Of a stretch of DNA of 64,000 nt, positions 39,411-64,000 are shown in pieces (within the stretch, counting starts at the first letter, position 1; each line of letters begins with the position of its first letter). The notes beneath the pieces are model-generated. The model made no database searches, was not told the DNA's origin, and saw only the letters and a list, made by a program, of their open reading frames with translations. The stretch covers positions 1 to 64,000 of the IMG/VR virus record IMGVR_UViG_3300027770_000027. One strand, given 5' to 3'. The translations under genes and the position numbers were made by a program.

Positions 39411-39835
39411 TGGTGGAGGCGAGGGGAGTTGAACCCCTGTCCTGAAAACTTAGACTTTAGCGTCTACAATCATATTTTGCTAACATTATAGGGACAAAGG
39501 GTTGTTAGCTAGTTTTTAGTCTACCTGCTGGCGCGAAGTCTACCAGCTACTCTCGGCTTGTTTTTATTGAGCTTCACGATCTTACTCAAACCTACTTAGG
39601 TTACTCCAGAAATTTTAATAGGATCCATTTCTGTTTGTTAGGCTGCGAGCTCGTACATCTCTTCTTCTGCGAGGTAATCCTCGAAGTTGTTGATGATGTG
39701 GGTTGCTTCAGCTAAGAGTGCTTCTGTATTATCAGTTGCATTTATTTGTTTGTCCAGAGATTTTAACGAGGCCAACCAGACTTCCTCGGATTGCAACTAA
39801 AGTTTTCAGCGCTCAGTCGAAACCAATGCGCCCCC
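39411..39835 (-). ncRNA. ssrA: tmRNA
   Basis: 5' GGGGGCG pairs with 3' CGCCUCC-ACCA (G3.U70); GGUUUCGAC; T-arm GGGGUUCAACUCCCC; resume context AUAAAU-GCA; tag ORF 39739-39638 ending LAA*. Confidence 0.95.
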
Positions 39836-47075: not shown

Positions 47076-47411
47076 TTATAATTTGCCACCTACTCGATGA
47101 GTGGCTCTATCACCTAGTAACCCTGCCCAGGCATTTCTGACTTGATCTCTCAGAGGATCTACAGAAGGTTCTTTAATAGCTCCTGTCCGAAATCCTGAAC
47201 AGGTGACATAATTTAAAACCCGACGAACCCTCCACGGATTATTTGGATCTACATCAAAATAAGCTTGCAGCCCCTTTACACACTCCGGCCCTTGAGCTGC
47301 CCATTTACCCTTCAACCACACTCGAAGCTTTTGCCACTCTGGATCATCAACTACAATTTGAATATTGGTTGCTTTTACCTTTTTTGCCAACTCTTGAATA
47401 CTTTCTTTCAT
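47076..47411 (-). CDS. Hypothetical protein
   Basis: 111 aa; TTCCCC-type promoter 6 nt upstream of the ATG. Confidence 0.55.
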   Translation of the reverse strand: MKESIQELAKKVKATNIQIVVDDPEWQKLRVWLKGKWAAQGPECVKGLQAYFDVDPNNPWRVRRVLNYVTCSGFRTGAIKEPSVDPLRDQVRNAWAGLLGDRATHRVGGKL

Positions 47412-49956: not shown

Positions 49957-50132
49957 TAAATTCCAACGTGGTTTTCGTCCCACAGGTCTAAATTGTGTTC
50001 GTGATGCCATTTGATAGCAATATCGCCGAGTGTCTGGTGGAGATTAAAGGCCCACTTTGTAGGAATCTTCCAGAGAAGAGGGCTAACTGCTAAGATGGCT
50101 TTACCTAAAAATCGAAGAACGGTTCTTTTCAT
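49956..50132 (-). CDS. 58-aa hypothetical protein (below ORF-track cutoff)
   Basis: MKRTVLRFLGKAILAVSPLLWKIP...; TTCCCC...TATAAT promoter 6 nt upstream. Confidence 0.55.
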   Translation of the reverse strand: MKRTVLRFLGKAILAVSPLLWKIPTKWAFNLHQTLGDIAIKWHHEHNLDLWDENHVGI

Positions 50133-50175
50133 GTCTTAATTATACTAACTCTTTTGGGGAATCTCTCGTAAAAAC

Positions 50176-50836: not shown

Positions 50837-50913
50837 TGGTGCAATCGGCGGGATTCGAACCCGCGACCAACAGATTAGAAATCTGTTGCTCTATCCAGCT
50901 GAGCTACGATTGC
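50837..50913 (-). tRNA. tRNA-Arg(UCU)
   Basis: GCAATCG...ACAGA-TT-TCT-AA-TCTGT...GGTTCGAATCCC...CGATTGC-ACCA. Confidence 0.95.
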
Positions 50914-50923
50914 TTGTTAAAAA

Positions 50924-50998
50924 TGGAGCGGGTAGAGGGAATTGAACCCTCCTATCTAGTTTGGAAGACTAGGGCATTAGCCACTATGCTATACCCGC
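50924..50998 (-). tRNA. tRNA-Gly(UCC)
   Basis: GCGGGTA...CTAGT-CT-TCC-AA-ACTAG...GGGTTCAATTCCC...TACCCGC-TCCA. Confidence 0.95.
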
Positions 50999-50999
50999 A

Positions 51000-51073
51000 T
51001 GGCACGTCCTGAGGGAATCGAACTCTCATCAACGGTTTTGGAGACCGCAGTTTTACCATTAAACTAAAGACGC
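51000..51073 (-). tRNA. tRNA-Trp(CCA)
   Basis: GCGTCTT...GCGGT-CT-CCA-AA-ACCGT...GAGTTCGATTCCC...AGGACGT-GCCA. Confidence 0.93.
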
Positions 51074-52909: not shown

Positions 52910-53638
52910 TTATGCCACCTCTTCTAAAATCTCTTTAATTTCTGTTGGATTATTAATTTCATATTCTGCTCTAATAAGAGCAAATGTTTCTTTAGATTTA
53001 AGCCCTTGTGTAAATTTTAGATGTTGAAACCATTCATAATCTTCTTCAGAAACATTAATCATATATTGTTTCTTTTTACCAGGACCTTCTTCAAAGGTGT
53101 CTATTCGTACCAAACGAAAATCTTGAACGCCCTCTTTAATCACAAATTCCTGTACGTCTGCTAGGGATCTAACAGATAGGCTAGTCAGTGCAAATCCTCT
53201 CTGTGGCATTCTATCTACTTCTAGAAAGAACTTGTCTTCTGCTACTTTTTTAAAATTTTTATTATGATACTGGGTCTTGCTACAATCTAAGACATTATGC
53301 TGACTATTCCAAAGATGAACCATTTCATGGAGAAGGGTTTCTAGAATATCATTAATGGGTCTCCTCAAAGTCTCTGCAGCAATCATAATCTCTGTATGAA
53401 GAGTGTTCTGATACTGCCACTTGTTCTTCCAATGCCATCCGAGGCAAGCCTTCTTGCCTCTAGACAAAATGGTAATCAACGGCCTATTGAGGATATTTTC
53501 ACAATACTTTTCATTAAAATGGTCAAAGGCTCTATTAAGAATCTCCACAGCCTTAACATAAGGATTCTCGAATCCTGGTTCAATGGCGGTGAATTCTTCT
53601 ACGATCTCTTCTGTCTGGTCTGTGGTTTCTTCTTTCAT
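52910..53638 (-). CDS. SprT-like zinc metalloprotease
   Basis: ILETLLHEMVH...YHNKNF. Confidence 0.85.
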   Translation of the reverse strand: MKEETTDQTEEIVEEFTAIEPGFENPYVKAVEILNRAFDHFNEKYCENILNRPLITILSRGKKACLGWHWKNKWQYQNTLHTEIMIAAETLRRPINDILETLLHEMVHLWNSQHNVLDCSKTQYHNKNFKKVAEDKFFLEVDRMPQRGFALTSLSVRSLADVQEFVIKEGVQDFRLVRIDTFEEGPGKKKQYMINVSEEDYEWFQHLKFTQGLKSKETFALIRAEYEINNPTEIKEILEEVA

Positions 53639-53673
53639 GCTATTATTATACCAACTTTTATGGGGAAGTTCAA
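53639..53673 (-). promoter_or_regulatory. TTCCCC-type promoter, predicted leaderless
   Basis: TTGAAC-TTCCCCATAAAAGTTGG-TATAAT-AATAGC-ATG. Confidence 0.8.
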
Positions 53674-53732: not shown

Positions 53733-54509
53733 TTAGAATGAAACGGTTACTCCTGCAGAATTCTGCACAAAGCTGTTGGAGGCATTTGCCAGAGTTGTGT
53801 CTGTATTATAGTAGATGCTACTTGCCTTGAGAGCAAGTCGATCGGTTACGTTATACACAAAAGCTAGTCCGGCTCCTGTAAATGCATACTTTAGGTCCTT
53901 GTTAGTTCGGGTATAATAGCTACTAGAGCCAGCACCCACACTAACTGGGACACTAACAGATAGCTTTCCGAGGTTCTTAGTAGGAAGGATCCCCGTTTCG
54001 TAATAAGTCCCTCCCTTTGGATCTACTGCCCTTGAGACGTAGACATATGGATTCAAGGTTACTGGAAAAAATCCTTCATCATTGAAAGATACCCGACCAG
54101 TTACTCCTTGAGTGTTTACACCATCTCGACCAGGATATGCCTTAACTTCATATCCCGGAGTCACTGTGAAGCGTCCGAGACCTAAGGCGAGTCCTGCATT
54201 GTACTTGCTACGATACAAGGTGGATCCACTAGTTCCTACAATCTGTTCTGTAGATAGTTGTAGAGTACCTCCTGTAAACAACGGATATGCCAAAGACAAC
54301 TTTGGAACTACCACTGGATTGCTATCTAGTACACGACCGTGATACGTGTAATTAGATACCAAACTCGTTTCTAAGCTACCAGTCAAATCTGACTTTGAAG
54401 CCAACGAGATGTCAGGGCCGATTGGGCGGGTTGAAGAACCAGCGGAAGCTCCTGACGTGAAAGCCACTGCAATAAGAGCGGCTACAATAGTATGTTTTAG
54501 TTTTGTCAT
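53733..54509 (-). CDS. Outer-membrane beta-barrel (TorF/gcw_chp-like porin)
   Basis: Signal peptide MTKLKHTIVAALIAVAFTSGASA; SNYTYHG; alternating beta strands; C-terminal VTVSF. Confidence 0.75.
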   Translation of the reverse strand: MTKLKHTIVAALIAVAFTSGASAGSSTRPIGPDISLASKSDLTGSLETSLVSNYTYHGRVLDSNPVVVPKLSLAYPLFTGGTLQLSTEQIVGTSGSTLYRSKYNAGLALGLGRFTVTPGYEVKAYPGRDGVNTQGVTGRVSFNDEGFFPVTLNPYVYVSRAVDPKGGTYYETGILPTKNLGKLSVSVPVSVGAGSSSYYTRTNKDLKYAFTGAGLAFVYNVTDRLALKASSIYYNTDTTLANASNSFVQNSAGVTVSF

Positions 54510-54545
54510 ACGATTTATATTAGATATGTGTTGAGGGAAATGCAA
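54510..54545 (-). promoter_or_regulatory. TTCCC-type promoter, predicted leaderless
   Basis: TTGCAT-TTCCCTCAACACATATC-TAATAT-7 nt-ATG(54509). Confidence 0.75.
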
Positions 54546-59765: not shown

Positions 59766-60557
59766 TCAAACTTTAAAAAGCTTCTTTAATTTATACTCAG
59801 CTCTACTAGTTGGTATATTACTTAGATCATCTAATTCTTTTCTAGTGAATGGTGCTGCAGGGGTTGGGATTCCGTCATAGGTTCGAGCAATGTCCGGTAA
59901 GATTTCCTCTTCACAAAATAGACTGCCGGACATATGCCAAACATTCAAAGTCAGGGTCACTGCTTTAATCTTATCTTCCAGACTCTCAGCTCCAAACAAC
60001 AAACGAAAACAATAATCTATTCCCTTATAAGCCTCCGCGGCGATATTGGATAAGTTCACCCGCTCCAGGTCCTCTTCGGCATGTAACAAAAAACGCGGGG
60101 ACTTGGGATTATTAATATAGTCGCCCGTCAAATAATCTATCTTTTGGGAATCCTCAGGCCAGTCCAGTTGAGGCTGCGTGTGCCTCATTAAGCGGCCGGC
60201 AGGCATAGGGGTCACTCCCCTACAATCGAACTCACTTAAAAGAGCCCTTCTCGTTCGTCTTCCGACATGCGCATCCATTATAGTAATAAGATATAATTTA
60301 ATCCATTCATAATGGTTTCTTATTTCTCTATCCACCTGTTGCTTCACTTGGTCCTGTTCGTCTCCATAGTGATAATCGGATAAGAGATATTTCATCATTA
60401 CATATTCATGAAATATATGGAGTCTCTTTAATGCCGTCCCCTTAAACTCTTTTACGATCTTCTGGATAACGGGATAATAACCGCGGTACAAGGGGGACAG
60501 CCGGATAGTGACAAGCAGCTTCTTCCTAAAGGCCATTACATCTGTTGTGGAACTCAT
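59766..60557 (-). CDS. Hypothetical protein
   Basis: 263-aa ORF; LNVWHMSG motif not assigned. Confidence 0.55.
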   Translation of the reverse strand: MSSTTDVMAFRKKLLVTIRLSPLYRGYYPVIQKIVKEFKGTALKRLHIFHEYVMMKYLLSDYHYGDEQDQVKQQVDREIRNHYEWIKLYLITIMDAHVGRRTRRALLSEFDCRGVTPMPAGRLMRHTQPQLDWPEDSQKIDYLTGDYINNPKSPRFLLHAEEDLERVNLSNIAAEAYKGIDYCFRLLFGAESLEDKIKAVTLTLNVWHMSGSLFCEEEILPDIARTYDGIPTPAAPFTRKELDDLSNIPTSRAEYKLKKLFKV

Positions 60558-60762
60558 CTAATACATACCGCGCCAGGTACAGGGGTCTATAGGGTATATA
60601 GGGGGTACTCTTATATAGTAGAACAGCGGATTGCCCCCACCCCCCGGCTCCGGCGTGATACCCCTATTACCTGTTTTTGAACAGCCGGGGTCCTTGCATA
60701 CCACGGTGCGAAAAATCCCCAGAGGTCCCTCTCCGCCCCTGGGGCTTGACTCGCCGCCTATG

Positions 60763-61149
60763 CTACTCGAGGCCGTTCTCCAGGAGGCTGTCGATGAAGC
60801 CGTACTCACATCCTAGGTCGAAGTCGAGGAACCGATTGTCACCAAGGGTCTCCTGGGCCTCGTGGAGCCACCGGATTGCCATCGCAACGTCCTGGGCCCC
60901 ATACTGCATGAGGACTCGGATCTGCTCCCGAGCTGCCTGCTCAGCCCTAGCGGTGCGTTGCTTCTCCTCTTCTACCTGGACATAGTACTCCCGCTCGAGC
61001 CGAGCCAGCATTCCCTTCAGCTCCTGCACCGTGACCTTGGTACCGTAGATCCACCGAGCCTTCACCCCGTAGACGTCCTTGTGGAAGTCACAGTACTCAT
61101 CCATCAGCTGCTCGAGTTCGGTGCGGGCGATCGTCATGTCATTCATCAT
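60763..61149 (-). CDS. Early-type hypothetical protein
   Basis: DFHKDVYGVKAR; own promoter; ATGATG start. Confidence 0.65.
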   Translation of the reverse strand: MMNDMTIARTELEQLMDEYCDFHKDVYGVKARWIYGTKVTVQELKGMLARLEREYYVQVEEEKQRTARAEQAAREQIRVLMQYGAQDVAMAIRWLHEAQETLGDNRFLDFDLGCEYGFIDSLLENGLE

Positions 61150-61187
61150 GTTTATATATTAGAGGAGAGAGTGGGGAACCTCAAGGA

Positions 61188-61412
61188 CTATCGGACCGTT
61201 GCGAGGTCCCAATCGTCGAGTCGGACCACATCCTTATTGGCTAGCTCGACGTCCACTGTGACCCGGTTCACCTTCACCACGGTGCCTGTGTGGCGGATGT
61301 TCTCGGTCTGCCGGCCGTCGAAGAACGTGGTCGTCCAGTTGATCGTCTGGCCGATGGTGAACTGATCCTTGAGGGTGGTCTTGGCGGTGTGCTTCTTAAT
61401 TACTTTCATCAT
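61188..61412 (-). CDS. Small SH3-like early protein, paralogue 1
   Basis: FFDGR...TGTVVKVNRVTVDV. Confidence 0.65.
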   Translation of the reverse strand: MMKVIKKHTAKTTLKDQFTIGQTINWTTTFFDGRQTENIRHTGTVVKVNRVTVDVELANKDVVRLDDWDLATVR

Positions 61413-61450
61413 GTATATATCTTAAGGGTTTATTGGGGGAACTGCAACAC

Positions 61451-61687
61451 TTACCAAGGCCGAGTATTAACCTTCACCTGACGGAGGTCTAGGCGGACTA
61501 CATCCTGGTTCGGCAGGTACACGTCCACGGTGACCTTGTTCATCTTGCACACGGTGCCGGTGTAAGGGACATACTCACCGGTCCGGCCGTCGAAGAAACG
61601 AATTACCCAGTCGACTACCTGTCCGGTGCGGAACTTGGGAAGCTGTTCGGTGTGGCGCTTGATTGTTCTCATTGCTGTTCTCATCAT
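61451..61687 (-). CDS. Small SH3-like early protein, paralogue 2
   Basis: FFDGR...TGTVCKMNKVTVDV. Confidence 0.65.
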   Translation of the reverse strand: MMRTAMRTIKRHTEQLPKFRTGQVVDWVIRFFDGRTGEYVPYTGTVCKMNKVTVDVYLPNQDVVRLDLRQVKVNTRPW

Positions 61688-61725
61688 GTATATATCTTAA
61701 GGGTTTCTGGAGGGAACTGCAAGCA

Positions 61726-62022
61726 CTACCGGTTGATCGTTGTGGTCCTATTCTGCAGGAGGAGGTCGAGCTCCTTCAGCTGCTTGAGGGTCGTGAGGTT
61801 CTCCTTCTGTACCAGCGCCAGGCCTTCCACGAAGTCGGTGTTCAGCCAGTCAGTCTTGAAGGCGAGTCCGTTCACCCCGAAGCCTAGGTGTGTGGTTCCT
61901 TCTTCCTCATCGGTGAGGATACCGAGGACGCGGAAGTCGATGGCCTTCGGGTTCTTGGCTTCGAGCGCCTGGAGGACTGCTACGCGGACTTCGGTCTTGG
62001 TGTTCATCTTGTTTTTCATCAT
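61726..62022 (-). CDS. Early hypothetical protein
   Basis: Own promoter; ATGATG start. Confidence 0.6.
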   Translation of the reverse strand: MMKNKMNTKTEVRVAVLQALEAKNPKAIDFRVLGILTDEEEGTTHLGFGVNGLAFKTDWLNTDFVEGLALVQKENLTTLKQLKELDLLLQNRTTTINR

Positions 62023-62060
62023 GTAATAATATTAACGGACGTTGGGGGGAACTGCAAGGA

Positions 62061-62333
62061 CTACTTCCGAGCTCTGGCCTTCTTGAACTGAGCCCTCACC
62101 TTTGCAAAGGTCTCGTCCTGCTCGGGCTCCGGGTAGAACCAGTTCCAGGTGTTGCGGACTCCCTTGACCAGGAGCTCGAGGAGGCACAGAGGGATGAGGA
62201 TCGGGGAGAGCACCACGGTGAGCAGAGCGGTGACAACGATCGTGGTGATACAGGCGCTCGCTAGTGCGTTGATCGTGGACTGGTGGCGGAGGCGGAAAGC
62301 GAAGGCTTCGGTGGGTGTCATGGTGTCTTTCAT
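62061..62333 (-). CDS. Early membrane protein
   Basis: Long hydrophobic segment; own promoter. Confidence 0.6.
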   Translation of the reverse strand: MKDTMTPTEAFAFRLRHQSTINALASACITTIVVTALLTVVLSPILIPLCLLELLVKGVRNTWNWFYPEPEQDETFAKVRAQFKKARARK

Positions 62334-62375
62334 CTTGTATATATCTTAGGTGAGGAGAGGGGGAACCGCACGGAC

Positions 62376-62468
62376 TTAGTTGAGGTCGAAGAGGTAGATA
62401 AAGGTCGCGCCGAGGCCTACGAGAAGGACGAAGTGAACTGTCACGGCTACTACTTGGAACGTTGTCAT
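62376..62468 (-). CDS. 30-aa single-TM peptide (below ORF-track cutoff)
   Basis: MTTFQVVAVTVHFVLLVGLGATFIYLFDLN; own promoter. Confidence 0.6.
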   Translation of the reverse strand: MTTFQVVAVTVHFVLLVGLGATFIYLFDLN

Positions 62469-62500
62469 TGTTAAGATATTAAAGGATGTACTGGGGAACC

Positions 62501-62695
62501 TCAAGCGAAGACTTCGTGGGCGATCCCGGACTCTGGCTGCTCGTAGGACTCGATGAAGAACCTCTTAGAGTCCTTCCGTTGCCAGATCCACTCCTCCGCG
62601 GACTTCCGATCGAAGAAGACTCCGATGAACTCATTGCCGCCGTTGGAGAAGGCTCCGGCTTCCTTGAACACGATATGGACTTGGGTCTTGGTCAT
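62501..62695 (-). CDS. Early hypothetical protein
   Basis: VHIVF...FIGVFFDRKSAEEW; own promoter. Confidence 0.6.
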   Translation of the reverse strand: MTKTQVHIVFKEAGAFSNGGNEFIGVFFDRKSAEEWIWQRKDSKRFFIESYEQPESGIAHEVFA

Positions 62696-62733
62696 AGTTC
62701 TATTATGGGTTAGGAACTGGGGAAGCTCAACGC

Positions 62734-62898
62734 TTATCGTCCGAGAGCAGGCAGGGGCTTCTGAACAGTCACCCAGTGGAGGATCTCGGTCGGGACTCGG
62801 AACACCTTAGCTGCCTGCTCTGCGTCCTCGCGCTTGGCGTAAGCTCCGAGGAAAGCCTGATTGTCTTCGCGAACGAGAATGTAAACGGTGTCTTTCAT
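62734..62898 (-). CDS. Early hypothetical protein
   Basis: Start MKDTVYILVRED; promoter occupies the ORF-track 5' extension; FLGAYAKREDAEQ. Confidence 0.6.
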   Translation of the reverse strand: MKDTVYILVREDNQAFLGAYAKREDAEQAAKVFRVPTEILHWVTVQKPLPALGR

Positions 62899-62930
62899 TG
62901 TTAATATCTTAGTGGATCTAACGGGGAAGC

Positions 62931-63128
62931 TCAAGCCTCAAGAGCGAGGACGTTGAACGGGACCTGGACTACCTGATTGCTGGGAAGTTCCACGCAGACA
63001 TCCAGCTCGGTGTTCTTCTCCAGGCGAGCGGCCACGGACATGGCCTGCCAGAGAGTCTCGTGGGATGTGTGGATCCGGTAGGGCTTGTTGGGGTAGAGAG
63101 GGGAGCGAGTGAGGACGTTGTAGGTCAT
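62931..63128 (-). CDS. Early hypothetical protein
   Basis: 65-aa ORF co-oriented in the array. Confidence 0.55.
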   Translation of the reverse strand: MTYNVLTRSPLYPNKPYRIHTSHETLWQAMSVAARLEKNTELDVCVELPSNQVVQVPFNVLALEA

Positions 63129-63140
63129 GGTGATTGGGAA

Positions 63141-63242
63141 TTAGAGGTTATGCTTAGCTGCTACGTAGGTCACGAAGACTGCGGCGACTCCGGTGAGAGC
63201 GACTCCGGTGAACATCAGGATGGGAAGGACTGTTTCAATCAT
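63141..63242 (-). CDS. 33-aa single-TM peptide (below ORF-track cutoff)
   Basis: MIETVLPILMFTGVALTGVAAVFVTYVAAKHNL; own promoter. Confidence 0.6.
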   Translation of the reverse strand: MIETVLPILMFTGVALTGVAAVFVTYVAAKHNL

Positions 63243-63281
63243 GTAATAATCTTAGCACATGACTGGGGGAACCTCCCGCCC

Positions 63282-63530
63282 TCAATAGTGCCGTGTCTTT
63301 GACTCTGTCTTGACTCGCTCATACTCTGCTCGCGTCCTCTCGTCTTCCAAAGAGAGGAGTAGCCGGTGGAGTTGGCCTGCAGCAACCTGATAGGCCTTCT
63401 CGGCGGTGTAGGCTTCCCGGCGAAGGGCATTGACGGCATCCAGCTTATCTGTCTTGTGAGCAGAGAGACTGTCCAGGAGGTCGAGTTGTTGGCGGACGCC
63501 GGGGTTATTGAGGATGTCTTGGTTATTCAT
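63282..63530 (-). CDS. Early coiled-coil protein
   Basis: 82-aa helical ORF. Confidence 0.55.
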   Translation of the reverse strand: MNNQDILNNPGVRQQLDLLDSLSAHKTDKLDAVNALRREAYTAEKAYQVAAGQLHRLLLSLEDERTRAEYERVKTESKTRHY

Positions 63531-63554
63531 AGATTTATTGGTTGTGGGGAAAGA

Positions 63555-63731
63555 TTAGTGGCGGTTCCGGGGATTGATTCCCTTCCCGGCGTTCTCCTGC
63601 CGGTGGATGATGACCCCGGCGATCACGAAGAGGACAATCACAGGCCAGAAGTTCACGGCGAGCTTGAGGAAGACCTGGCCAATGAGGGAAAGCTTGTCTG
63701 TGAGGGTCATGTCGAAGTGTTCTTGAATCAT
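63555..63731 (-). CDS. 58-aa membrane peptide (below ORF-track cutoff)
   Basis: MIQEHFDMTLTDKLSLIGQVFLKLAVNFWPVIVLFVIAGVIIHRQ...; CATAAT 6 nt upstream. Confidence 0.6.
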   Translation of the reverse strand: MIQEHFDMTLTDKLSLIGQVFLKLAVNFWPVIVLFVIAGVIIHRQENAGKGINPRNRH

Positions 63732-63788
63732 GTTTCTATTATGGCTGGGAATGCTGGGAAGGGAACGGCTGACTTTAACATTGAGGTC

Positions 63789-63971
63789 CTACTTGCACAG
63801 GCAGTAGACTCCGAAGAGGGCCAGCCCTCCCACGATGAGGCCGTGGTTCCCCAGGAACGCGAGACATAGGGTTCCCAGGGCGGTTCCGGCCATCGCCATT
63901 CCTAGGAAGGCGGACGGGCATAGGAACCAGAGGGCTGCGAGAACGGCGAGGAACATCATTACTTTCATCAT
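63789..63971 (-). CDS. 60-aa hydrophobic membrane protein
   Basis: Almost entirely hydrophobic; own promoter; ATGATG start. Confidence 0.6.
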   Translation of the reverse strand: MMKVMMFLAVLAALWFLCPSAFLGMAMAGTALGTLCLAFLGNHGLIVGGLALFGVYCLCK

Positions 63972-64000
63972 GTATATATCTTACAGGACTTGAGGGGGAA

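What the first reader, a model, noticed from the sequence alone, without database searches (positions are those of the whole stretch)
61150..64000. One promoter per gene, leaderless mRNAs and a novel TTCCC(C) spacer element
Seen: 11 promoters in 2.9 kb, with a fixed 17-nt spacer that always begins TTCCC, a -10 of TAAGAT/TAATAT/CATAAT and, in 10 of 11, only 6-7 nt to the ATG. Five genes start ATG-ATG, and one has AAG-ATG at the same place. TTCCC persists where the -35 is degenerate (GTGCGG, GGGAGG, GTTCCC; also GGGAAC at 47411 and GAGAGA at 50132). Known: sigma70 starts about 7 nt after the -10, so +1 would be the A of AUG, and leaderless mRNAs are read by 70S ribosomes without SD, resisting some initiation blocks. 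Inference: the TTCCC box is an extra recognition element (host-lineage sigma feature or an injected phage factor), and leaderless design lets early genes be translated while host initiation is disabled or under stress.
Basis: partly seen in the sequence, partly recalled or inferred. Interest (0 to 1): 0.75.

Follow-up and report, generated by a model that had tools for sequence, protein, structure and literature searches.

The report
Leaderless early promoters with TTCCC box
An uncultivated freshwater giant phage gives almost every early gene its own promoter placed so that the message should begin exactly at the start codon, and all these promoters share a strongly conserved TTCCC box whose reader is unknown; this is a new variant of known phage early-promoter arrays, not a new kind of system.

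Summary
On the minus strand of 61150-64000 there are 11 copies of KTGnnn-TTCCC(C)-17-nt spacer-TAAGAT/TAATAT/CATAAT-6 to 7 nt-ATG, serving 11 of 13 small genes.

The window is the start of a 227-kb genome of an uncultivated freshwater T4-like jumbo phage. That genome holds about 45 such promoters, in front of pre-replicative genes and ORFans. The same architecture occurs in relatives down to about 48% core-protein identity.

In 20 orthologous promoter pairs the TTCCCC box is 90% identical. The -35 hexamer is 54% and the rest of the spacer 40%. The box is therefore a selected element, not chance and not a hairpin.

Shine-Dalgarno motifs are depleted genome-wide, and gp55-type late boxes also sit 5-6 nt from ATG. 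Leaderless layout therefore looks like adaptation to the host's translation system, not an early-gene trick.

The block's GC jump (GC3 0.62-0.82 against about 0.3 elsewhere) fits early genes tuned to a GC-rich host's tRNAs. The phage brings 10 tRNAs for A-ending codons.

A lake metatranscriptome over-represents the block, but 5' ends could not be mapped.

The parts
61150..61184 (-). Promoter 1: TTGAGG / TTCCCCACTCTCTCCTC / TAATAT / ATAAAC, then ATGATG at 61149 (128-aa gene 60763-61149)
61413..61447 (-). Promoter 2: TTGCAG / TTCCCCC... / TAAGAT / ATATAC, then ATGATG at 61412 (74-aa gene). The promoter plus the first codons are duplicated at genome position 91232.
   Evidence: contig break at the repeat
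61688..61722 (-). Promoter 3: TTGCAG / TTCCCT... / TAAGAT / ATATAC, then ATGATG at 61687 (78-aa paralogue of the previous gene)
62023..62057 (-). Promoter 4: TTGCAG / TTCCCCCC... / TAATAT / TATTAC, then ATGATG at 62022 (98 aa)
62334..62371 (-). Promoter 5: GTGCGG / TTCCCCC... / TAAGAT / ATATACAAG, then ATG at 62333 (90-aa membrane-like protein). The predicted leader is 3 nt.
62469..62504 (-). Promoter 6: TTGAGG / TTCCCCAG... / TAATAT / CTTAACA, then ATG at 62468 (30-aa hydrophobic peptide)
62696..62730 (-). Promoter 7: TTGAGC / TTCCCCAG... / CATAAT / AGAACT, then ATG at 62695 (64 aa)
62899..62934 (-). Promoter 8: TTGAGC / TTCCCCGT... / TAAGAT / ATTAACA, then ATG at 62898 (53 aa)
63243..63277 (-). 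Promoter 9: GGGAGG / TTCCCCCAG... / TAAGAT / TATTAC, then ATG at 63242 (33-aa hydrophobic peptide). The next gene, 62931-63128, has no promoter of its own.
63732..63766 (-). Promoter 10: GTTCCC / TTCCCAGC... / CATAAT / AGAAAC, then ATG at 63731 (58 aa, membrane-like). The next gene, 63282-63530, has no promoter of its own.
63972..64000 (-). Promoter 11 (its -35 lies beyond the window end, at genome 64001-64006): TTCCCCCTCAAGTCCTG / TAAGAT / ATATAC, then ATGATG at 63971 (60-aa hydrophobic protein)
60711..60744 (-). Intrinsic-terminator-like hairpin CCCCAGGGG...CCTCTGGGG followed by ATTTTT, 19 nt after the stop codon of the last block gene (TAG at 60765-60763). It is the only such site in 59.5-64 kb.
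60560..64000 (-). GC-rich early block (53% GC against about 35% elsewhere; gene GC3 0.62-0.82). It continues to about 65.3 kb of the genome and recurs at 70.3-71.2 and 74.6-75.9 kb.
   Evidence: RNA depth
47412..47446 (-). Same promoter type outside the finding: GGGAAC / TTCCCCAATAATTCTAC / TATTAT / AGTAGT, then ATG at 47411. It drives a 111-aa all-helical protein that is highly conserved in the family.
50133..50167 (-). Same promoter type: GAGAGA / TTCCCCAAAAGAGTTAG / TATAAT / TAAGAC, then ATG at 50132
53639..53673 (-). Same promoter type: TTGAAC / TTCCCCATAAAAGTTGG / TATAAT / AATAGC, then ATG at 53638. This is the 'dialect' that dominates in the distant relatives G508 and G509.
54510..54545 (-). 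Same promoter type: TTGCAT / TTCCCTCAACACATATC / TAATAT / AAATCGT, then ATG at 54509

Best explanation
The stretch is the first part of the early (pre-replicative) gene block of an uncultivated freshwater T4-like jumbo myovirus of 227 kb. Nearly every small gene has its own host-RNAP (sigma70-geometry) promoter: a weak -35 (KTGnnn), an invariant TTCCC(C) at about -29 to -24, a spacer of exactly 17 nt, a -10 of TAAGAT or TAATAT, then 6 nt ending in pyrimidine-A, so that transcription should start on the A of ATG (inferred). There are no terminators between genes and one at the end of the block. The promoters would therefore give nested, co-terminal transcripts in which each gene is once the 5'-terminal, leaderless cistron. 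In effect the promoter does the job that a ribosome-binding site does elsewhere (inferred). This is not an early-only trick. The whole phage lacks Shine-Dalgarno sequences, and its gp55-type late promoters also abut start codons, so the layout reflects a host whose ribosomes initiate without SD and handle leaderless mRNA (inferred from shown statistics). The TTCCC box is a selected promoter element, about as conserved as the -10 and far more than the -35. It most likely acts positively, supplementing or replacing -35 recognition inside the RNAP-promoter complex. Because essentially every -35/-10-type promoter of the genome carries it, its reader must already be present at infection: either the host holoenzyme or a host factor, or a protein delivered with the virion. 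Which of these is unresolved. The GC-rich codon usage of the block lets immediate-early genes use the tRNA pool of a GC-rich host. Meanwhile the same promoter class drives the phage's own tRNAs for A-ending codons, which the AT-rich later genes need.
For: Geometry and statistics come: TTCCC lies at offset 17 in 43 of 285 anchors against at most 5 elsewhere; the gap to ATG is 6 nt in 34 of 43; C(-1) occurs in 31 of 40 and A(+1) in 37 of 40. There are 45 promoters genome-wide, nearly all on one strand between 47 and 110 kb. They drive a DnaB-like helicase, an RNA ligase, a thymidylate kinase, an SprT-like protein, ATPases and ORFans, and no structural genes. T4-like identity rests on TerL, tail sheath, baseplate proteins, and a gp55-like late sigma next to a gp47 homologue. 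The footprint in 20 orthologous pairs gives identity 0.90 for the box, 0.54 for the -35 and 0.40 for the rest of the spacer. The architecture is kept in relatives at 80%, 70% and about 48% protein identity, while the -10 flavour, the discriminator and ATGATG change. The promoter cores do not form a hairpin (mean z -0.23). TTG at the -35 position is not enriched among start-proximal TAnnnT sites that lack the box. TTCCCC on the gene strand in 60.5-76.5 kb is in promoter geometry in 23 of 24 cases. SD-like motifs occur upstream of 5.2% of genes against 11.1% at random positions. TAAATA boxes peak 5-6 nt before ATG. There is a single terminator at the block end. In a lake metatranscriptome the word depth is 15-31 over the block and 3-6 over the flank, while the DNA run gives 31-42 throughout. 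There are 14 tRNAs, 10 of them for A-ending codons, and block GC3 is 0.62-0.82. Experimental precedent that a -10 a few bp upstream of an ORF makes leaderless mRNA comes from PMC12340547 and PMC4007540.
Against: No transcription start site was mapped; the RNA data are assembled contigs without ends or direction. One RNA contig spans all the promoters, so read-through transcripts (or DNA carry-over) exist, and internal initiation on AU-rich upstream sequence could also translate these genes. The host is unknown. No reader of TTCCC was identified. The box was not found enriched in the bacterial genomes sampled. The T, A and T of the -10 were imposed by my search patterns, so their conservation is partly circular; the box in the relatives was not imposed. 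The GC difference could contribute to the depth difference in the RNA library.
Confidence: 0.6

Rival explanations
1. TTCCC is an operator for a phage repressor that is made early from these same promoters. The repressor then binds between -35 and -10 of the whole class and shuts off early transcription, acting like Cro.
For: The box lies where a bound protein would occlude RNAP. In several promoters the degenerate -35 (GGGAGC, GGGAGG, GGGAAC) forms an inverted repeat with TTCCC. In leaderless-rich lineages a -10 alone can suffice as a promoter (PMC12340547), so the box need not contribute to recruitment.
Against: Most copies have no second half-site. The box is asymmetric, strictly oriented and at one exact distance from the -10, which fits a part of the RNAP complex better than an independent operator. 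No DNA-binding domain was detected among the 45 motif-driven proteins.
Confidence: 0.15
2. These are middle-type promoters activated by sigma appropriation. A phage activator made after infection binds the box at about -30 while a co-factor remodels sigma region 4, as MotA and AsiA do in T4.
For: The promoters combine a degenerate -35, a conserved box ending 11 bp upstream of a stringent -10, and a T4-like phage. The published geometry of T4 middle promoters is in PMC2988021.
Against: No MotA_activ, MotCF or AsiA match was found in the genome (the controls cannot ring for phage-only families). The box sequence is unlike the MotA box. G at -33 and often TTG are retained. Almost no box-free -35/-10 promoters exist from which such an activator could first be made.
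Confidence: 0.1
3. The genes are not translated as leaderless mRNAs. Long read-through transcripts dominate, and the AT-rich TAAGATATATAC stretch before ATG serves as an unstructured, SD-independent ribosome landing site. The promoter likeness is secondary.
For: One metatranscriptome contig runs across all the promoters. Upstream regions are A/T-rich and G-poor genome-wide. Many promoter-less genes in the block start right after a stop codon (TAAT-ATG).
Against: This does not explain the invariant TTCCC and the G at -33 at a fixed 17-nt spacing, the TAnnnT pattern, or the conserved C-A at the predicted start. Both modes may coexist.
Confidence: 0.1
4. One reading: leaderless early mRNAs exist so that early genes can be translated by 70S ribosomes while the phage disables canonical host initiation.
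For: Leaderless mRNAs can be translated by 70S ribosomes and resist some initiation blocks (established knowledge). The early genes have the leaderless layout.
Against: The late genes have the same layout and the whole genome avoids SD, so nothing distinguishes early from late translation signals. Distant relatives share the trait.
Confidence: 0.08
5. The box is conserved only because the promoters are young copies kept alike by recombination between repeats (PeSL-like homogenisation), and not because anything reads it.
For: Promoter-plus-start duplications exist. Identical spacers occur at 64756 and 65028, at 70377 and 70941, and at 72309 and 75919, and the 61449 promoter recurs at 91232.
Against: Within the same promoters the remaining 11 spacer positions have diverged to 40% identity, while the box stays at 90% across orthologues. 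The box survives in relatives at 48% protein identity, whose -10 flavour and discriminator differ.
Confidence: 0.05

Closest known systems
Early promoter arrays and PeSL cassettes of T4-type phages (PMC2839356, PMC4122927; T4 early 'uber' promoters, PMC2988021)
   Same: Both are T4-like phages with dozens of near-identical sigma70-type promoters, roughly one per small ORFan, in plastic regions of the genome. Both show extra consensus beyond the -35 and -10. Here too, promoter repeats are duplicated together with gene starts.
   Different: PeSLs contain a stem-loop terminator or attenuator in or next to the spacer and end in a Shine-Dalgarno sequence. Here there is no hairpin, no SD and no leader, and the extra consensus is a TTCCC box at -29 to -24. 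The -35 is weak, whereas in T4 early promoters it is excellent.
T4 MotA-box middle promoters (sigma appropriation; PMC2988021)
   Same: Both have a conserved box around -30 in place of a good -35, a fixed short distance to a stringent -10, and dependence on host RNAP.
   Different: The box sequence and its exact position differ (the box here ends at -24; the MotA box spans -35 to -26). No MotA or AsiA homologues were found. The G at -33 is retained. Every sigma70-type promoter of the genome has the box.
-10 motif directly upstream of ORFs giving leaderless mRNAs in Deinococcus-Thermus and Actinobacteria (PMC12340547, PMC4007540, PMC3160421)
   Same: Both have TAnnnT a few bp before the start codon, a -35 that is weak or dispensable, and a specific spacing requirement.
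   Different: Those are cellular genes, and the same genomes also use GGAG ribosome-binding sites. Here SD is absent altogether, and an additional conserved box is present.
Leaderless middle and late transcripts of Thermus phage phiYS40
   Same: An AT-rich large phage of a GC-rich host whose transcripts start at the start codon.
   Different: As I recall it, in phiYS40 the leaderless classes are the middle and late ones and have only a -10-like element. That phage is unrelated to this one. No TTCCC-type box is known to me there.

Membership tests
sigma70-type (-35/-10) bacterial promoter | -10 hexamer TAnnnT | tested here: met
   The -10 hexamers are TAAGAT (18), TAATAT (11), TATTAT (4) and others. 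T1, A2 and T6 were imposed by the search patterns, but positions 3-5 are also conserved (0.65-0.9 in orthologues).
sigma70-type (-35/-10) bacterial promoter | -35 hexamer resembling TTGACA, 17 +/- 1 bp upstream | tested here: inconclusive
   The spacing is exactly 17 nt. Only 24 of 45 promoters have TTG; G at -33 is kept in about 90%; orthologue identity of the hexamer is 0.54.
sigma70-type (-35/-10) bacterial promoter | Transcription starts about 7 nt after the -10 at a purine | not testable with these tools
   Only assembled RNA contigs were available. C-A is conserved at the expected position.
Leaderless mRNA | The 5' end of the transcript coincides with the start codon | not testable with these tools
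   Inferred from the 6-nt gap in 34 of 43 promoters. No 5'-end data were available.
Leaderless mRNA | No Shine-Dalgarno sequence or 5' UTR | tested here: met
   There is no room for a leader, and SD-like 4-mers are depleted genome-wide (5.2% against 11.1%).
PeSL (promoter-early stem-loop) cassettes of T4-type phages | Repeated sigma70-like early promoters flanking ORFans in a T4-type phage | tested here: met
PeSL (promoter-early stem-loop) cassettes of T4-type phages | Stem-loop (terminator or attenuator) within or overlapping the promoter | tested here: not met
   The 37-nt promoter cores have mean MFE -3.7 kcal/mol and mean z -0.23 against shuffles.
PeSL (promoter-early stem-loop) cassettes of T4-type phages | Shine-Dalgarno sequence at the 3' end of the cassette | tested here: not met
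PeSL (promoter-early stem-loop) cassettes of T4-type phages | Recombination between repeats that shuffles genes | tested here: inconclusive
   Duplicated promoter-plus-start modules exist, and gene content differs between relatives, but breakpoints were not mapped.
T4 MotA/AsiA-dependent middle promoter | MotA and AsiA encoded by the phage | tested here: not met
   No match to PF09114, PF09158 or PF09010. Caveat: the control set cannot ring for these families.
T4 MotA/AsiA-dependent middle promoter | MotA box (a/t)(a/t)(a/t)TGCTTtA centred at -30 | tested here: not met
   The box here is TTCCC(C) at -29 to -24.
T4-like phage with gp55-dependent late transcription | gp55-type late sigma and TATAAATA-like late boxes | tested here: met
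   A phrog_234 'late sigma transcription factor' (E 2e-27) lies at genome 192358-192987, next to a gp47 homologue. TAAATA/ATAAATA boxes lie before late genes.

The most novel reading that the evidence does not exclude
TTCCC(C) at -29 to -24 is a previously undescribed core-promoter element that takes over much of the role of the -35. Its reader would be either the RNAP holoenzyme of an uncultured GC-rich, SD-independent host lineage or a virion-delivered phage protein unrelated to MotA, AsiA or Alt. In this phage family, promoter-per-gene leaderless transcription has replaced ribosome-binding sites as the way of addressing individual genes, for early and late genes alike.
Probability: 0.35. 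Interest if true: 0.8.

Novelty: new variant of a known kind. Interest (0 to 1): 0.55.

Why it matters
If the start sites are confirmed, this phage family would be a natural example of a whole viral expression programme built on leaderless mRNAs, in both the host-sigma early class and the gp55 late class. It would show how a T4-type phage adapts to a host that ignores Shine-Dalgarno sequences. The TTCCC box is a clean, deeply conserved 5-6-bp element in a part of the promoter that no known sigma70 contact reads specifically. Identifying its reader would reveal either a lineage-specific mode of promoter recognition or a new phage takeover factor. The split codon usage, together with the tRNA set, is a clear example of temporal tuning to host and then phage tRNA pools. 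It also predicts a GC-rich host for an abundant but uncultured group of lake phages.

Tried and rejected
- **Nucleotide searches:** searches against GenBank phages gave nothing.
- **Strict motif scan:** a strict motif scan of IMG/VR found only the same phage.
- **Relative G001 (125 kb):** it does not cover the early region, so it was uninformative.
- **Relative L068:** this phage carries a 52% homologue of the 128-aa block protein. It lacks the motif and the GC-rich block, and has its own ECF-like sigma.
- **Hairpin (PeSL-type) explanation of the spacer:** rejected.
- **Marker genes:** MotA, AsiA, WhiB, psbA and bS21 were all absent.
- **Host identification through RNR homologues in bacterial genomes:** this returned mostly short phage-like contigs binned into MAGs. 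Two are Planctomycetota, one is SAR202 and one is Flavobacteriales. That is at best a hint, not evidence.
- **Promoter pattern in bacterial genomes:**
  - Planctomycetota: 70 matches against 65 in the control, in 201 genomes.
  - Actinomycetota: 0 of 195 genomes.
  - Cyanobacteriota: 0 of 101 genomes.
  - Deinococcota, Verrucomicrobiota, Alphaproteobacteria and GC-rich Bacteroidota could not be reached with the handles available.
- **Metatranscriptome:** the contigs could not resolve 5' ends.
- **111-aa early protein (47079-47411):** it is highly conserved and gave a confident all-helical model (pLDDT 88.6). It has no Pfam or PHROG match and no structural match in PDB or AFDB clusters, so it cannot be put forward as the box reader.
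- **Other similarities considered from memory and rejected on geometry or strand:** the sigma32 consensus, the ECF -35 (GGAAC, on the opposite strand), sigma54, and the HAIR/HspR half-site.

Full report
**What is there.**
- The genes of 60.7-64 kb lie on the minus strand. Read on that strand, 11 of the 13 small ORFs are preceded by the same module: a -35-like hexamer, a 17-nt spacer beginning with TTCCC(C), a -10 of TAAGAT, TAATAT or CATAAT, 6-7 nt (9 nt in one case), then ATG.
- Five genes begin ATGATG, and one has AAGATG at the same place.
- Stop codons of the preceding genes lie just before or inside the -35, so the intergenic space is essentially only the promoter.

**More than chance.**
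- TTCCC-N12-TAAKAT with up to 1 mismatch occurs 18 times in the window, against 4.6 +/- 1.8 in dinucleotide shuffles.
- I then anchored only on TAnnnT followed after 5-8 nt by an ATG opening an ORF of at least 30 aa, across the whole genome. TTCCC starts exactly 17 nt upstream of the -10 in 43 of 285 anchors, and at any other offset in at most 5. The gap from -10 to ATG is 6 nt in 34 of those 43.
- The base before the ATG is C in 31 of 40 promoters, and the A of ATG is present in 37 of 40. This is the pyrimidine-purine pair that RNAP prefers at -1/+1, at the canonical distance from the -10.

**Context.**
- The window is the first 64 kb of a single 227,352-bp contig of about 36% GC.
- The genome encodes a T4-type large terminase, tail sheath and baseplate/fibre proteins, class I RNR, and a gp55-type late sigma next to a gp47 homologue. 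The best matches to cultured phages are only 31-37% identical in TerL (phiM9, pf16, Cr30, cyanomyoviruses).
- Sequencing runs holding the region are freshwater and lake metagenomes. The phage is therefore an uncultivated freshwater T4-like jumbo myovirus.
- The genome holds about 45 promoters of this type, nearly all on the minus strand between 47 and 110 kb.
- Their genes include a DnaB-like helicase, an RNA ligase, a thymidylate kinase, an SprT-like protein, ATPases, DUFs and many ORFans. None are structural genes and none are recognisable transcription factors. This is the profile of an early or pre-replicative class.

**Conservation of the box.**
- Relatives were recovered at several depths:
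  - G004 is syntenic at 65-92% nucleotide identity.
  - L069 and L067 are 80% and 70% identical in a block protein.
  - G006 is more distant.
  - G508 and G509 are syntenic, with a median of 48% identity over about 50 core proteins.

- All of them carry TTGnnn-TTCC(C)-...-TAnnnT-6 nt-ATG promoters clustered in a GC-elevated block.
- At the deepest divergence the -10 flavour changes (TATAAT instead of TAAGAT), the discriminator changes (AATAGT instead of ATATAC), and the double ATG is absent. TTCCC(C/A)C, the 17-nt spacer and the 6-nt gap remain.
- In 20 orthologous promoter pairs, paired by downstream proteins of 47-83% identity, per-position identity is as follows:
  - box: 0.90
  - the three unforced -10 positions: 0.65-0.9
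  - -35 hexamer: 0.54 (only its G is kept)
  - the other 11 spacer positions: 0.40
  - upstream flank: 0.47
- Of the 45 promoters, 21 lack TTG at the -35, yet they do not differ from the others in box, -10 or start context.
- On the gene strand of 60.5-76.5 kb, 23 of 24 TTCCCC occurrences are in promoter geometry.
- The promoter cores do not fold (mean z -0.23), so the box is not a PeSL-type hairpin.
- The box is therefore a selected, oriented, position-fixed DNA element.

**Leaderless layout is genome-wide.**
- Upstream of 212 ORFs of at least 100 aa, SD-like 4-mers occur in 5.2% of the -18 to -4 windows, against 11.1% at random positions. These regions are A/T-rich and G-poor.
- T4-late-like TAAATA/ATAAATA boxes peak 5-6 nt before ATGs: 34 cases, against at most 6 at any other distance. 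Examples lie before genes at 44-52 kb.
- Promoter-less genes often start one base after the preceding stop codon (TAAT-ATG).
This is not supported. The simpler reading is a host whose ribosomes do not depend on SD.
- That a -10 placed a few bp before an ORF yields leaderless mRNA is experimentally established in Deinococcus (PMC12340547; 60% leaderless in D. deserti, PMC4007540).

**Transcript architecture.**
- In 59.5-64 kb the only terminator-like site is a GC-rich hairpin followed by ATTTTT, 19 nt after the last gene's stop codon (60744-60711).
- The promoters should therefore give nested, co-terminal transcripts. Each gene's own promoter makes the one transcript on which that gene has a 5'-terminal AUG. 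This is my inference of why there is one promoter per gene.
- In a lake metatranscriptome, assembled contigs give a word depth of 30.6 (60441-61425) and 15.4 (61396-64000) over the block, against 2.7-6 over the adjacent low-GC genes. A DNA run gives 30.7-41.9 throughout.
- This fits preferential transcription of the block. One contig spans all the promoters, so read-through RNA or DNA carry-over is present. No 5' ends can be read from contigs.

**The GC jump.**
- Block genes have GC3 of 0.62-0.82, against about 0.25-0.35 elsewhere.
- The genome carries 14 tRNAs. Ten of them read A-ending codons (AGA, GGA, UUA, CUA, AUA, CAA, CCA, ACA, GCA, AAA), which are frequent in late genes and rare in the block.
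- The main tRNA cluster lies directly downstream of box promoters, at 96.9-97.4 kb.
- This fits a GC-rich host, immediate-early genes tuned to the host's tRNA pool, and phage tRNAs supplied for the AT-rich later genes (inference).
- Not all box-driven genes are GC-rich; those at 87-99 kb are not.

**Who reads the box?**
- TTG at the -35 position is not enriched among start-proximal TAnnnT sites that lack the box. Even isolated promoters elsewhere in the genome have the box.
- An activator that must first be synthesised is therefore unlikely.
- No MotA or AsiA homologue was found.
- Tests of a host-lineage feature were negative but weak:
  - Planctomycetota: 70 matches against 65 in the control, in 201 genomes.
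  - Actinomycetota: 0 of 195 genomes.
  - Cyanobacteriota: 0 of 101 genomes.
- Within the listed part of IMG/VR, only this phage family shows clusters of the motif.
- A repressor-operator role remains possible.
- A strikingly conserved 111-aa early protein (47079-47411) folds confidently but matches nothing known.

**Comparison with known systems.**
- The nearest described systems are the early promoter arrays and PeSL cassettes of T4-type phages (PMC2839356, PMC4122927, PMC2988021).
- The logic is the same, with many near-identical host-type promoters each serving a small ORFan. Here, however, there is no hairpin, no SD and no leader, the -35 is weak, and there is a new conserved box.
- The box recalls the geometry of MotA boxes, but it fails the membership tests for that family.
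- I file the finding as a new variant of a known kind.

Noticed in passing
window 39411-39835 (-): The phage encodes a full-length one-piece tmRNA (Rfam RF00023, 132.6 bits). ARAGORN predicts an unusually long tag peptide ending in ...YELAA.
   Followed up: partly
window 50837-51073 (-) and genome 93.8-96.5 kb: There are 14 tRNA genes, 10 with anticodons for A-ending codons. Genes in 60.7-65.3, 70.3-71.2 and 74.6-75.9 kb have GC3 up to 0.82, against about 0.3 elsewhere, so codon usage within one phage genome is bimodal.
   Followed up: yes
window 61188-61412 and 61451-61687 (-); genome 90284-91195: Two adjacent small paralogues share the motif FFDGR...TGTV.K.N.VTVDV.L.N.DVVRLD. The promoter plus the first codons (ATGATGAAAGTAATTAA) of the first paralogue recur in front of a 303-aa gene at genome position 91232.
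   Followed up: no
window 62061-62333, 62376-62468, 63141-63242, 63555-63731, 63789-63971 (-): Five of the 13 block proteins are short and strongly hydrophobic, so they look like membrane peptides or proteins (judged by eye from the translations).
   Followed up: no
window 47079-47411 (-): A 111-aa early protein is about 75% identical in relatives whose core proteins are about 48% identical. Invariant motifs are VVDDPEWQ, KGKW and RVRRVLNYVTCSGFRTGAIKE. The predicted structure is confident and all-helical (pLDDT 88.6) but has no match in Pfam, PHROGs, PDB or AFDB. Many database copies are called 7 residues longer.
   Followed up: yes
window 60763-61149 (-): Public gene calls for the 128-aa protein and its homologues start at the second ATG of the ATGATG pair (127 aa). 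Some JGI records name it 'archaellum component FlaC', probably because of a coiled-coil resemblance.
   Followed up: no
L068:1544-2044 (+): A distant phage carries a 52% homologue of the 128-aa protein but has no TTCCC promoters and no GC-rich block. It encodes a 166-aa ECF-like sigma factor (Sigma70_r2/r4) among its small early-looking genes, and it is also SD-less.
   Followed up: partly
L070, L073 (genome contigs): RNR homologues at 58% and 53% identity sit on short contigs binned into two Planctomycetota MAGs, one of them a Phycisphaerales MAG from a lake time series. This may be co-abundance binning of related phages with their host, or it may be mis-binning.
   Followed up: partly
window 60441-60762 (-): RNA contig depth stays high for about 270 nt beyond the terminator-like hairpin, into the start of the next gene (59766-60557). 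The roughly 200-nt GC-rich spacer has no Rfam match and no significant fold (z 0.22).
   Followed up: partly
genome 64-100 kb (e.g. 67.0-69.1 kb): Promoter-less genes inside the early region very often begin as TAAT-ATG or with overlapping stop and start codons. This suggests termination-reinitiation as the second SD-independent initiation mode.
   Followed up: no
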